Below are positions 3,877 to 6,900 of a stretch of DNA of 64,000 nt, one piece after another; within the stretch, counting starts at the first letter, position 1; each line of letters begins with the position of its first letter. The stretch is from Macrostomum lignano. Taxonomy: Eukaryota. Below the pieces are notes generated by a model that was given only the letters and a program-made list of their open reading frames with translations, was not told the origin of the DNA and ran no database searches. The translations under genes were made by a program, and so were the position numbers. The DNA is taken from positions 78,768-142,767 of the forward strand of contig NIVC01002758.1 of the NCBI GenBank assembly GCA_002269645.1, in the 5' to 3' direction.

Positions 3877-3978
3877 CACAAAGACGCCACAGCGCTGCAT
3901 TTGGCGTCCTACATCGGGCACAAAGACATTGTTCGCTTTTTGATATCGTCGAAAGCCGATCCTAATGCCTCTACCAGC
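3877..3978 (+). CDS. Ankyrin-repeat exon ([34 protein letters not shown])
   Basis: tttcag acceptor and gttagt donor, 102 nt, phase 0/0; matches the ankyrin consensus TALHLA..GH.DIV..LL. Confidence 0.9.
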
Positions 3979-6900
3979 GTTAGTCTTTGTTTTCTTTTCT
4001 AACGAAACAGCTTTAAAAAGTACATTTCAAGTTCGATTTTTAAATAACTTGTGTTTCTTTATAAATCGCTATTCAGCTTGGCTACCGACCTATACATTTC
4101 GCCGCTTCGGAGGGTCACGTGACTACGGTGGATATTTTGCTCAACGCCGGGGCCGAAGTGAGCCCAGTCACTGCTGTAAGCTGACAGCCTTGATAGTAGC
4201 TATGCAAGTGTCTGATAGTGCATTATTATTTTACCATATCCTGTTCTTTTGGTTTGTTTAATGGTTAAATTTCGCATTTTCCGGCAATACTGTTAGACAG
4301 TTATTAGATCCTGTTAGACAGTTATTAGATACTGTTAGACAGTTGTTTAATGCTGTTAGACAGTTATTAGATGCTGTTAGACAGTTGGATACTGTTAGAA
4401 AGTTCTTAGATGCTGTTAGACAGTACTTAGATGATGTTAGACAGTTATTAAATACTGTTTGACAGTTATTAGATACTGTTAGACAGTTGTTTAATGCTGT
4501 TAGACAGTTATTAGATACTGTTAGACAGTTGTTTAATGCTGTTAGACAGTTATTAGATACTGTTAGACAGTTGTTTAATGCTGTTAGACAGTTGGATACT
4601 GTTAGAAAGTTCTTAGATGCTGTTAGACAGTACTTAGATGATGTTAGACAGTTATTAAATACTGTTAGACAGTTATTAAATACTGTTAGACAGTTATTAG
4701 ATACTGTTAGACACTTATTAGATACTGTTAGACAGTTATTAAATACTGTTAGACAGTTATTAGATACTGTTAGACAGTTATTAAATCCTGTTAGACAGTT
4801 ATTAAATACTGTTAGACAGTTATTAAATCCTGTTAGACAGTTATTAAAAACTGTTAGACAATTGTTAAATGCTGTTAGACAATTGTTAAATGCTGTTAGA
4901 CAGTTATTAGATACTGTTAGACAGTAATTAGATACTGTTAGACAGTAATTAGATACTGTTAGACAGTAATTACATACTGTTAGACAGGTACTGATTCTCA
5001 ATACGCATTCAAAATAGGACGGCGACACTCCAATCGCGCTCGCCCTGAAGTGGGGAATGCGCGACACAGTTCGCAAACTGCTGAACAGCGGCGCCACTCT
5101 GGACGGCCTGGACGATGCGTCGCTAAAAAAGTACGCTAAGCGCGGCTTCCTGCCGTCTCAAGAAGCCGCTTCGCCAACTCGACAGTCGGCTGCACCATCG
5201 GCTGGCGGAAGAAAAGGAGGCGGCAATGTTAGACAGCAGCAGCAGCGGCATCATTATCAAGGTGCTGGCGGCGGTTATTCAATGGGCGATTCGTCCACTC
5301 AGCGACGGTGGCGCGAATTGACGTCGAAATTTGCCGATGCCGAAGTCGGCAGCGGCGGCAGTGCTGATGATAGCCGGTCGGCGGCCTTCACTGCGGTAGC
5401 TCGCTGCGTTCGCCGTCTGTTGGCCGACTGTCGCACCGAGGAGCGACTGGAAGCTCGAGCTGCAACGCTTGCTTCCGCGCTGCGCTCAGCTGGCCCGGAT
5501 TTGGCCACGGCCGGAGATCTGGCCGAATTGCTGGAGATGCTGGCCTTCGATTGCGGCTTCCCAGTATCTGGCTCGCTGGCCGACTGCCTGGCCGGACTGC
5601 GACTTCGGTGTCGTCGAATAAGAGAAGGTCCAGGCGCTTGGGCCGTGCGCTTGATGCGTACGGTGCGTACTTTTTTGCTGCTGTCGTTTCTCTATAGTAT
5701 TTTTATCATATATACTGTGTACATGTATAGAGGAAGTGTTTTCTGAACCCACCTTATTCTGCCTGTCTCCTAGACAGCCACTGTATCTCAATAAAATGTC
5801 TTATTAAGGCACACCCAATCTGCTCTTGTGTTCCCTAACTGTACATAGACTTGACGCGCCCGCCTCACTCCACCACTGTCCCCCTAGATTGTACATTGAC
5901 GCGCCCACCTCACTCCGCCACTCTATCCCCCTAAACTGTACATTGACGCGCCCGCCTCACTCCGCCACTCTGTCCCCCTAGACTGTACATTGACGCGCCC
6001 ACCTCACTTCATCACTCTGTCCCCCTAAACTGTACATTGACCCTCCCGCCTCACTCCGCCACTCTGTCCCCCTAAACTGTACATTGACGCGCCCACCTCA
6101 CTCCACCACTCTGTCCCCCTAGATTGTACATTGACGCGCCCACCTCACTCCGCCACTCTGTTCCTATAGACTGTACATTGACGCACCTACTTCATTCAGC
6201 CACTCATACATACTGTTTCAGGCGCAGGACCCGTCGCTAGATTCCCATTCCGTAGACGCCAGTCTTTGCCTCTGTAACGCCCTGCTAAGCATGGAACAAG
6301 CTGACTGCACCGGCCGTCTGGCTCCTGCTGCTGAAGAATTTATTAATCAAACTTTGTCGGCTCTGGAAGGCACCGAGGAGCCGCGGCACCTGGTGCAATT
6401 ACTTGCTCTGGTTCAGCTCTCATCAGAATTATTCGAACCAAATTTTCTATCCAAATTCGAACAATTTGCCGACGTTCTAATTGGCTGGTCCATTGATCCG
6501 GGCGATTCCGCCGAGTTCGCCCTGTCCAAACGGCTGGCCGCCTGTCTAACCTCGCTAGGTAGATTATGGCGCGCCAACTCTAATTACACCTGGCAACTGC
6601 TTGACAGCCTAGTTGAAGATGTGTCCGTCTTTGTTAATGAAGAATTGCCTTCGGCACTGGCTAAAGCCACTAGCGGCGGCGGCGGCGGCGGCGGCGGCGG
6701 CGGCGGCGCGCGAGCTGATTCGCCAGTTGAGGCGGCTATGGCTGCAGCGCCGCTGCTGGAGACGTTTGCCACGGTGCTAACTGCGCTGGACAATGCTAGC
6801 TGTCGGCAGGCTGATGATGGTAAGGCCTTGGGGTTGGCTCTCCAGAGTGTTAATTTCGTGCACTAATCGTGCACTAAAGCTCCAAATTATAATGTATAAA

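What the first reader, a model, noticed from the sequence alone, without database searches (positions are those of the whole stretch)
3877..6819. Ankyrin repeats fused in frame to the N-terminus of SMG1
Seen: two one-repeat ankyrin exons (3877-3978, 4077-4175) splice in phase 0 to an exon starting at 5018. That exon has a third ankyrin repeat and runs with no stop through a G/Q linker into SMG1 N-terminal-like sequence. Its gtgcgt donor (5663) joins in phase 0 to the clear SMG1 exon at 6222. Known: the SMG1 orthologs I am aware of have HEAT-FAT-FRB-kinase-insertion-FATC and no ankyrin repeats. Inference: a lineage-specific ANK-SMG1 chimera that could give the NMD kinase new interaction partners. 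The ankyrin array probably extends upstream of the window.
Basis: partly seen in the sequence, partly recalled or inferred. Interest (0 to 1): 0.85.

Follow-up and report, generated by a model that had tools for sequence, protein, structure and literature searches.

The report
Ankyrin exons in frame with SMG1
In the flatworm Macrostomum lignano, three ankyrin-repeat exons run without a stop codon into the start of the SMG1 kinase gene, so an unusual ankyrin-SMG1 protein is possible, but no transcript or protein data could be reached to show it is made.

Summary
Exons 3877-3978, 4077-4175 and 5018-5662 carry three Pfam-significant ankyrin repeats. The third repeat lies in one uninterrupted frame (5018-5743) with the first SMG1 coding exon. 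That exon splices in phase 0 to 6222, which is SMG1 by similarity to human SMG1.

The window is M. lignano contig NIVC01002758.1 (window + 78,767). I built a 25-exon SMG1 model ending in FATC at 31547.

The junction is not an assembly join. Three UniProt models from an older, independent assembly show the same contiguity. One of them places a COQ2/UbiA-like gene directly before the first ankyrin exon, so the array probably has only three repeats and does not extend upstream.

Against a long-standing fusion: the 55-codon linker (5117-5281) lacks this gene's codon signature, the 5018 acceptor is weak, and ATG 5282 sits where an ordinary SMG1 would start. An open in-frame link would arise by chance about 5% of the time.

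No transcript evidence could be reached. I put a translated ANK-SMG1 fusion at about 0.5 and a separate SMG1 start at ATG 5282 at about 0.33. If real, it is a new domain variant of a known kinase. Public RNA-seq would settle it.

The parts
1..3791 (.). Two tandem-repeat arrays upstream of the first ankyrin exon: a 24-bp unit x82 at 1-1966 and a 34-bp unit x54 at 1989-3791. This is an intron or a trans-splicing outron/intergenic spacer.
   Evidence: Tandem Repeats Finder. All frames are open only because the units contain no stop codon. An in-frame stop at 3826-3828 separates the arrays from exon 1 (ORF +_3829_3999).
3877..3978 (+). Ankyrin exon 1 (34 aa, [34 protein letters not shown]). Phase 0 at both ends. 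Strong acceptor cttactctccttgaTTTTCAG, donor GTTAGT. No in-frame ATG.
   Evidence: Codon log-likelihood ratio (LLR) 0.40. The acceptor fits the M. lignano trans-splice motif YTNCAG (PMC8629364).
4077..4175 (+). Ankyrin exon 2 (33 aa, [33 protein letters not shown]). Phase 0. Donor GTAAGC.
   Evidence: Codon LLR 0.24.
4176..5017 (+). Intron 2, filled with a 21-bp tandem repeat (4287-4987). It ends in the weak acceptor cattcaaaaTAG. An alternative AG lies at 4986-4987.
   Evidence: Model P0121 uses the 4988 start.
5018..5116 (+). Third ankyrin repeat ([33 protein letters not shown]), the 5' part of exon 3. The first in-frame ATG of the whole ORF is at 5057, inside this repeat.
   Evidence: Codon LLR 0.53.
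5117..5281 (+). S/A/G/Q-rich linker of 55 codons, open in frame but without the gene's codon signature. It contains GT 5131 (AAA|GTACGC) and the only pyrimidine-rich AG inside the exon (5161-5162).
   Evidence: Codon LLR -0.006, against a CDS mean of 0.416 (SD 0.134); only 0.03% of 3399 windows score as low. GC3 is 0.45 against 0.68. AF2 predicts coil with pLDDT about 30, at low overall confidence. Splice-site scan.
5282..5662 (+). ATG (MGDSS...) plus a helical region, taken as the start of the SMG1 N-terminal HEAT arch. Donor ACG|GTGCGT at 5663, phase 0.
   Evidence: Collinear with human SMG1: M5282 corresponds to about human residue 109. Codon LLR 0.27 and 0.21. Helices from residue 159 in the AF2 model. 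No direct sequence similarity to human SMG1.
5663..6221 (+). Intron 3, with a 47-bp tandem repeat. If the intron is retained, the frame stops at 5744 and an AATAAA follows at 5790.
6222..6819 (+). SMG1 exon 4, the first stretch with demonstrable SMG1 homology (human residues 271-374).
7492..31550 (+). Remaining SMG1 exons 5-25 in my model. They include the SMG1 domain (10239-11869), the kinase domain (20344-22704) and FATC ending ...EGWTAWV, with the stop at 31548-31550.
   Evidence: Gene model. Pfam SMG1 E=7.6e-34, PI3_PI4_kinase E=3e-31, FATC E=2e-15. Human SMG1 6l53_A E=5e-177, collinear. SMG1-named kinase fragments at up to E=5e-114.

Best explanation
The three ankyrin exons are 5' coding exons of the M. 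lignano SMG1 transcription unit.

Shown: exon 1 (3877), exon 2 (4077) and exon 3 (5018) all start in phase 0. ANK3, a 55-codon low-complexity linker and the SMG1 N-terminus form one exon and one open frame that continues to the FATC end.

Inferred: the mRNA 5' end is made at the strong 3877 acceptor. None of the ankyrin exons has an in-frame ATG before 5057. The M. lignano spliced leader ends in ATG, so the likeliest route is SL trans-splicing at 3877. That would donate the initiator Met directly in frame (M-HKDATALH...). The product would be a roughly 3,740-aa SMG1 with a small three-repeat ankyrin module tethered by a flexible linker of about 55 residues (5117-5281) to the HEAT arch.

Inferred: the linker is evolutionarily young, formerly non-coding sequence, which would explain why it has no codon bias. 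The ankyrin module would act as an added protein-docking surface on the NMD kinase.
For: - ANK repeats are significant and are the only three in 64 kb.
- The reading frame is uninterrupted from 5018 to 5743, and the splice to 6222 is in phase.
- No in-frame stop, no downstream ankyrin exon and no convincing internal intron exist that would let an independent ankyrin ORF end or leave.
- An open in-frame link is expected by chance only about 5% of the time.
- The ankyrin exons have intact splice sites and positive codon scores of 0.24-0.53.
- The same ANK3-linker-SMG1 contiguity appears in three UniProt M. lignano models from a different assembly (A0A1I8JNN9, A0A1I8FLF8, A0A1I8FCC4). At least one shows amino-acid substitutions in otherwise matching stretches and is probably a diverged paralogue.
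- In A0A1I8FCC4 a nearly complete COQ2/UbiA-like sequence directly precedes ANK1. The ankyrin exons therefore belong to neither a longer upstream ankyrin gene nor to COQ2.
- The 3877 acceptor (TTTCAG) fits the M. lignano SL acceptor motif YTNCAG, and the SL ends in ATG (PMC8629364).
- Flatworm SL AUGs are documented initiators (PMC9851317 citing Cheng et al. 2006).
Against: - No transcript, SL-read or peptide evidence was reachable.
- The linker 5117-5281 scores -0.006 on the gene's codon statistic, lower than 99.97% of SMG1 CDS windows. Its GC3 is 0.45 against 0.68.
- The 5018 acceptor (caaaaTAG, poor pyrimidine tract) is the weakest of the 25 exons.
- ATG 5282 is collinear with about residue 109 of human SMG1, and predicted helices start right after it.
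- The three UniProt models are frameshift-riddled ab initio predictions and do not count as transcript evidence.
- To my knowledge no SMG1 or other PIKK carries ankyrin repeats.
Confidence: 0.5

Rival explanations
1. SMG1 is an ordinary SMG1 that starts at ATG 5282. Its mature mRNA 5' end, from its own TSS or an SL acceptor, lies between 5058 and 5281. The ankyrin exons are a remnant of a partial gene duplication, or part of the outron or precursor RNA of a COQ2-SMG1 operon. They are in frame by chance and are not translated with SMG1.
For: - The linker lacks a coding signature while the sequence on both sides has one.
- ATG 5282 is collinear with the start of the structured N-terminus of human SMG1, and helices begin right after it (low confidence).
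- The 5018 acceptor is weak.
- A pyrimidine-rich AG exists at 5161-5162.
- About 7% of assembled M. lignano transcripts are multi-gene precursors, and gene models there often merge neighbours (PMC5730564).
- Chance in-frame openness of about 5% is not negligible in a genome-wide scan.
Against: - The 5161 AG does not fit YTNCAG, and no YTNCAG occurs anywhere in 4950-5700.
- A remnant would be expected to decay, yet all three ankyrin exons keep open frames, repeat phase, canonical splice sites and codon bias.
- The Kozak context of ATG 5282 is poor (T at -3, read directly from the sequence).
- Any mRNA that includes 5018-5281 would translate the linker in frame from the SL AUG or from ATG 5057.
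Confidence: 0.33
2. Partial inclusion. The mature SMG1 mRNA begins at exon 3, either by SL trans-splicing at 5018 or by use of the alternative AG at 4986-4987. Translation then starts at the SL AUG or at ATG 5057. The protein would carry only one ankyrin repeat, or a truncated and probably non-folding one, plus the linker. Exons 3877 and 4077 would be untranslated or unused.
For: - Exon 3 also starts in phase 0, so an SL AUG would be in frame.
- ATG 5057 has a good -3 G and is the first in-frame ATG.
- Model P0121 joins at 4988, which puts the TAG at 5015 in frame upstream of ATG 5057.
Against: - The 5018 acceptor is weak and is not YTNCAG.
- It leaves two intact, correctly phased ankyrin exons unexplained.
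- P0121 is an ab initio model on a noisy assembly.
Confidence: 0.12
3. Assembly or annotation artefact: the ankyrin sequence and SMG1 are joined by a misassembly inside 5130-5280.
For: The genome is highly repetitive and recently duplicated. Tandem repeats flank the exons.
Against: - The stretch 5051-5422 is collinear in models from a different, PacBio-based assembly on three separate contigs.
- There is no repeat or composition break at 5117-5281.
- The window matches the Mlig_3_7 contig at 100% over the 21.6 kb that could be compared.
Confidence: 0.03

Closest known systems
Canonical metazoan SMG1 (human SMG1; PDB 6L53, 6SYT, 6Z3R, 7PW4)
   Same: - Collinear N-terminal HEAT arch, SMG1 domain, FAT region, PI3K/PI4K kinase domain, long insertion and FATC. 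Against 6l53_A E=5e-177. Pfam SMG1, PI3_PI4_kinase and FATC all hit.
- Similar size: 3,581 aa from ATG 5282, against 3,661 aa in human.
   Different: - The open reading frame continues upstream of the SMG1 N-terminus through a 55-codon linker into three ankyrin repeats.
- Human SMG1 instead has a disordered N-terminal tail of about 130 residues. No similarity between that tail and the linker was detectable.
- Ankyrin repeats are not part of any SMG1 architecture I know of (own knowledge, not tested across orthologues here).
UniProt M. lignano automatic models A0A1I8FCC4, A0A1I8JNN9 and A0A1I8FLF8
   Same: They are translations of the same locus or its paralogues. They contain ankyrin pieces joined to the SMG1 N-terminal region up to window 11869. 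One is named 'ANK_REP_REGION domain-containing protein'.
   Different: - They are truncated and frameshift-riddled predictions on an older, error-rich assembly.
- They use ad hoc GT-AG jumps, for example 3931>5051 and 4158>5132.
- One also merges the COQ2-like neighbour.
- They show that the adjacency is already in databases, but not that the fusion is expressed. No paper discussing it was found.
Ankyrin-repeat protein kinases (ILK, ANKK1/RIPK4, DAPK1, TNNI3K)
   Same: A short ankyrin array used as a docking module on a kinase polypeptide (own knowledge).
   Different: Those are conventional ePK-fold kinases, some with the ankyrin repeats C-terminal. Here the partner is a 3,600-aa PIKK, and there are only three repeats on a flexible tether.
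Polycistronic precursors, SL trans-splicing and slORFs in flatworms
   Same: - M. lignano has operons with repeat-filled spacers.
- Its SL ends in AUG, and its SL acceptors follow YTNCAG (PMC8629364, PMC5730564).
- The SL AUG can start translation (PMC9851317).
- The layout here is COQ2-like gene, then repeats, then the 3877 acceptor, which fits that pattern.
   Different: In an ordinary operon each cistron has its own stop codon. Here the ankyrin ORF has none before SMG1.

Membership tests
SMG1 (PIKK family Ser/Thr kinase) | PI3K/PI4K-type catalytic domain | tested here: met
   Pfam PF00454 scores E=3e-31 on exon 21213-21893 and E=5e-6 on exon 20344-20733. The closest database fragments are named SMG1, with E down to 5e-114.
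SMG1 (PIKK family Ser/Thr kinase) | C-terminal FATC domain | tested here: met
   Pfam PF02260 scores E=2e-15 at the end of exon 30951-31547. The sequence ends ...EGWTAWV followed by a stop.
SMG1 (PIKK family Ser/Thr kinase) | SMG1-specific N-terminal domain (PF15785) and collinearity with human SMG1 | tested here: met
   PF15785 scores E=7.6e-34 on exon 11270-11869. Four collinear aligned blocks against 6l53_A, overall E=5e-177.
SMG1 (PIKK family Ser/Thr kinase) | FRB and the long insertion domain between kinase and FATC | tested here: inconclusive
   About 1,200 aa lie between the kinase domain and FATC in my model. That region is poorly conserved, its exon junctions are the least certain, and no domain-level test was run.
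SMG1 (PIKK family Ser/Thr kinase) | UPF1 phosphorylation and a role in NMD | not testable with these tools
   Requires biochemistry or genetics.
Ankyrin-repeat domain | Tandem 33-residue repeats matching the Ank profile above threshold | tested here: met
   Pfam Ank 64.8 bits (cut-off 21.1), three stretches. Ank_2 58.5 bits covers residues 7-95. DARPin matches in the PDB.
Ankyrin-repeat domain | Folds as a stacked helix-turn-helix array | tested here: inconclusive
   The single-sequence AF2 model has mean pLDDT 46. Paired helices appear at each repeat with pLDDT 55-79, which is too low to rely on.
   Linker codon LLR is -0.006, at the 0.03rd percentile of SMG1 CDS windows. GC3 is 0.45. One genuinely conserved CDS window scores as low, so this weakens the claim but does not exclude translation.
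   No transcript collection was reachable. Exact look-ups of my full-length models were negative but uninformative.
SL trans-spliced gene of an M. lignano operon | Acceptor motif YTNCAG with no upstream cis donor, and a short repeat-adjusted distance to an upstream same-strand gene | tested here: inconclusive
   TTTCAG is present at 3871-3876, and only about 85 bp of non-repeat sequence lies between the repeat arrays and the exon. The upstream COQ2-like gene is inferred only from model P0124 and lies outside the window. SL-read evidence is not available.

The most novel reading that the evidence does not exclude
The main SMG1 protein of Macrostomum lignano is initiated by the AUG of the trans-spliced leader at the 3877 acceptor. 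It carries a lineage-specific three-repeat ankyrin module on a young, flexible linker derived from non-coding sequence. This would be the first PIKK with ankyrin repeats, and an example of a new domain captured between two genes of an operon.
Probability: 0.4. Interest if true: 0.6.

Novelty: new variant of a known kind. Interest (0 to 1): 0.4.

Why it matters
SMG1 is the kinase that commits mRNAs to nonsense-mediated decay. As far as I know, its HEAT-FAT-kinase-FATC architecture is conserved across eukaryotes. A tethered ankyrin docking module would imply new partners or new regulation in a regeneration model.

It would also show how operons and an AUG-bearing spliced leader can turn neighbouring exons and spacer DNA into new N-terminal domains.

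If it is not translated, the locus is a clean warning case. In this repeat-rich, recently duplicated genome, in-frame adjacency produces plausible-looking chimeric models, and three of them are already in UniProt.

Tried and rejected
The kinase query returned only fragments shorter than 480 aa, so orthologue N-termini could not be inspected.

2. The single exhaustive search included the ankyrin repeats. Beyond the three M. lignano models, giant ankyrin proteins filled the top 150, so SMG1 orthologues of other species were not seen. In hindsight, leaving out exons 1-2 would have been better.

3. Exact-product look-ups failed for ORF 5057-5743, ORF 5282-5743, P0124 and two forms of the PANTS-like gene. 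As a result, neither the annotated SMG1 model, nor the upstream 78 kb of the contig, nor the paralogue's SMG1 5' end could be fetched.

4. I built a full 25-exon model with a dynamic-programming gene finder and manual correction. Exact look-up of the 3,581-aa and 3,736-aa versions found neither in the collection. This is uninformative, because any single junction error would cause a miss.

5. I looked for an in-frame internal intron that would remove the linker and found none with good sites.

6. I looked for similarity between the linker or the rest of exon 3 and the human SMG1 N-terminal tail and found none.

7. The linker shares an 11-nt match with the intron-2 repeat, which is not significant.

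8. The AF2 single-sequence model is too low in confidence to use for more than secondary-structure hints.

9. The literature and supplements of four M. lignano papers contain no mention of SMG1 or COQ2.

10. No tRNA or Rfam hits, and no spliced-leader gene, occur in the window.
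Full report
**What is in the sequence**

The window is eukaryotic, with GC-rich exons separated by introns packed with tandem repeats.

- 3877-3978 gives [34 protein letters not shown].
- 4077-4175 gives [33 protein letters not shown].
- 5018-5662 begins [33 protein letters not shown].

Pfam Ank matches all three repeats (E=4.4e-18), and Ank_2 spans them. A repeat HMM run over every ORF of both strands finds these three and no others in 64 kb.

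Each ankyrin exon starts in phase 0 at the same point of the repeat and has canonical splice sites. The frame of exon 3 opens immediately after the TAG of its own acceptor (5015-5017) and stays open to 5743. The other two frames carry 6-8 stops over the same span. Exon 3 is 645 nt, and its GTGCGT donor at 5663 joins 6222 in phase 0.

**The downstream gene is SMG1 and looks intact**

Exon 6222-6819 aligns to human SMG1 residues 271-374. I extended the model to 25 exons ending ...EGWTAWV, with the stop at 31548.

- Individual exons hit Pfam SMG1 (E=7.6e-34), PI3_PI4_kinase (E=3e-31) and FATC (E=2e-15).
- The first 2,143 residues counted from ATG 5282 align collinearly with human SMG1 (6l53_A, E=5e-177).
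- On that alignment, ATG 5282 corresponds to about human residue 109.
- The non-ankyrin part of exon 3 has no detectable similarity to human SMG1. Calling it SMG1 N-terminal rests on position, frame and predicted helices only.

**Organism, locus and independent support for the junction**

An exhaustive HMMER search with the ANK + SMG1 N-terminal model returned three near-identical proteins. They are UniProt Macrostomum lignano entries A0A1I8JNN9, A0A1I8FLF8 and A0A1I8FCC4.

Aligned back to the window, they hop between reading frames while matching the DNA almost perfectly. They are therefore ab initio models on an older, indel-rich assembly, and they do not count as transcript evidence.

They are still useful for two reasons.

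- First, the stretch ANK3-linker-SMG1 (5051-5422) is contiguous on separate contigs of a different assembly, so the junction is not a misjoin. At least one model carries real substitutions and is probably a diverged paralogue (for example SMEQAEC against SMEQADC).
- Second, A0A1I8FCC4 begins with about 260 residues of a COQ2/UbiA-like protein (RPIGTWLLYLPCAW, GVKSTALLFGD, FKSNRNLGL; weak Pfam UbiA hit). This sequence runs almost to its natural C-terminus before joining ANK1 directly. The ankyrin array therefore probably has only three repeats, and a COQ2-like gene sits upstream on the same strand.

Looking up the single-exon P450 of the window placed the window on Mlig_3_7 contig NIVC01002758.1 (window coordinate + 78,767; the window ends at the contig end). 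It also revealed a paralogous contig, NIVC01002460.1, at 92-99% identity.

**Is the fusion more than chance, and is it old?**

A spacer of this composition is stop-free in a given frame 12-16% of the time. With the one-in-three requirement that SMG1's frame match ANK3's, an open in-frame link arises by chance about 5% of the time. That is suggestive but not overwhelming for a genome-wide scan.

Against long-term coding, I scored sequences with a codon log-likelihood ratio (LLR): the coding frame against the two other frames, trained on SMG1 exons 4-25.

| Segment | Codon LLR |
|---|---|
| Linker 5117-5281 | -0.006 |
| SMG1 CDS, all 55-codon windows | mean 0.416, SD 0.134 |
| ANK1 / ANK2 / ANK3 | 0.40 / 0.24 / 0.53 |
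| 5282 onward | 0.27 and 0.21 |

- Only 0.03% of 3,399 CDS windows score as low as the linker.
- The linker's GC3 is 0.45, against 0.68 for the gene.
- One genuinely conserved window scores equally low, so this does not exclude translation. It does say the linker has not been shaped like the rest of the gene.
- The 5018 acceptor (caaaaTAG) is the weakest of the 25 in the model.
- No in-frame internal intron with good sites could remove the linker.

**How it most likely works**

An independent ankyrin gene is hard to sustain. There is no in-frame stop, no further ankyrin exon downstream, and COQ2 appears complete upstream. None of the ankyrin exons contains an in-frame ATG before 5057.

M. lignano trans-splices about 30-39% of its genes. 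The rate is highest for conserved genes, and many of them sit in operons whose spacers are full of repeats. Its leader ends in ATG, and the SL acceptor motif is YTNCAG (PMC8629364, PMC5730564). Flatworm leader AUGs are documented initiators (PMC9851317 citing Cheng et al. 2006).

The 3877 acceptor (ctccttgaTTTTCAG) fits the motif, follows about 85 bp after 3.8 kb of repeats, and opens a phase-0 exon. A leader spliced there would give M-HKDATALH... in frame all the way to FATC.

I therefore favour an SL-initiated ANKx3-linker-SMG1 protein with a young linker, at confidence about 0.5. The splice and SL steps are inferred, not shown.

**Rivals**

1. SMG1 starts at ATG 5282 from an internal 5' end, and the ankyrin exons are a still-intact remnant or precursor-only sequence (about 0.33). 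This fits the linker statistics and the collinearity with human SMG1. It needs a 5' end between 5058 and 5281, where the only pyrimidine-rich AG (5161-5162) does not fit the SL motif.
2. The mRNA starts at exon 3 and carries only one ankyrin repeat, or a partial one (about 0.12).
3. Assembly artefact (about 0.03), contradicted by the independent assembly.

**Comparison with what is known**

By every tested criterion the gene is a bona fide SMG1. The ankyrin extension is not part of any SMG1 or PIKK architecture I know of (own knowledge; I could not survey orthologue N-termini here). I found no paper on it.

The adjacency is already present, unremarked, in three automatic UniProt models. If translated, it is a new domain variant of a known kinase. 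If not, it is a textbook chimeric-model trap.

**Limits**

No transcript data were reachable. The tools only allow look-ups of contiguous window ORFs, so the following all stayed out of reach:

- the annotated SMG1 product;
- the upstream 78 kb of the contig;
- the paralogue's junction.

The AF2 single-sequence model (mean pLDDT 46) offers only hints. It shows helix pairs at the repeats, coil for residues 118-158, and helices from residue 159, just after Met156, the residue encoded by ATG 5282.

Noticed in passing
window 1-3791: Two very regular tandem arrays, a 24-bp unit x82 and a 34-bp unit x54, at 98% identity. They have no stop codons in several frames, which produces 1,200-codon pseudo-ORFs. 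They lie between the inferred upstream COQ2-like gene and the first ankyrin exon.
   Followed up: partly
window 4287-4987, 5851-6205, 7006-7395, 8089-8636, 9415-10163, 10744-11212 and further introns: Almost every SMG1 intron is filled with its own tandem repeat (21, 47, 45/90, 4, 16 and 44/88 bp units). The 45-47-bp families in introns 3 and 4 share the motif TGTACATTGAC...CACCTCACTCCGCC.
   Followed up: no
window 46972-48549 (-): Single-exon cytochrome P450 (526 aa, Pfam p450 E=5e-70). An identical protein is annotated on two Mlig_3_7 contigs (NIVC01002758.1 and NIVC01002460.1), which shows the region is duplicated at 92-99% DNA identity with large repeat-length differences.
   Followed up: yes
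window 35832-36374 (-): PANTS-like (PF11326) single-exon ORF just downstream of SMG1. It is annotated on the paralogous contig as a 177-aa 5'-partial product. The two forms I tried (177 and 167 aa) were not found for this contig.
   Followed up: partly
window 34024-34233 and 34622-34849 (+): A two-exon ORF of 145 aa with a signal-like N-terminus, a Ly6/uPAR three-finger cysteine pattern (CYVC...CEHC...CCSNEDYCN) and a hydrophobic GPI-like tail. This reading is by eye only.
   Followed up: no
window 49232-49693 (-): Fragment of a Tc1/mariner-type transposase N-terminus (HTH_23, HTH_38 and PAX-like hits).
   Followed up: no
window 63304-63576 (+): An exon encoding a P-type cation-ATPase N-terminal domain (PF00690, E=1e-16). 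The gene runs off the contig end.
   Followed up: no
window 56282-56851 (+): A 189-aa Ser/Ala-rich ORF with no Pfam hit. It is an annotated gene on both paralogous contigs.
   Followed up: no
window 6895-6970: A tRNA-like stretch (..GGAATCGAACCCAGAG..) inside intron 4. ARAGORN does not call it a tRNA. It may be a SINE or tRNA-derived fragment.
   Followed up: partly
P0121, P0122, P0124 (UniProt A0A1I8JNN9, A0A1I8FLF8, A0A1I8FCC4): All three old gene models stop exactly at the end of exon 8 (window 11869), before the 2.4-kb repeat-filled intron. This may reflect a limit of the evidence used for those models, or a real short isoform.
   Followed up: no
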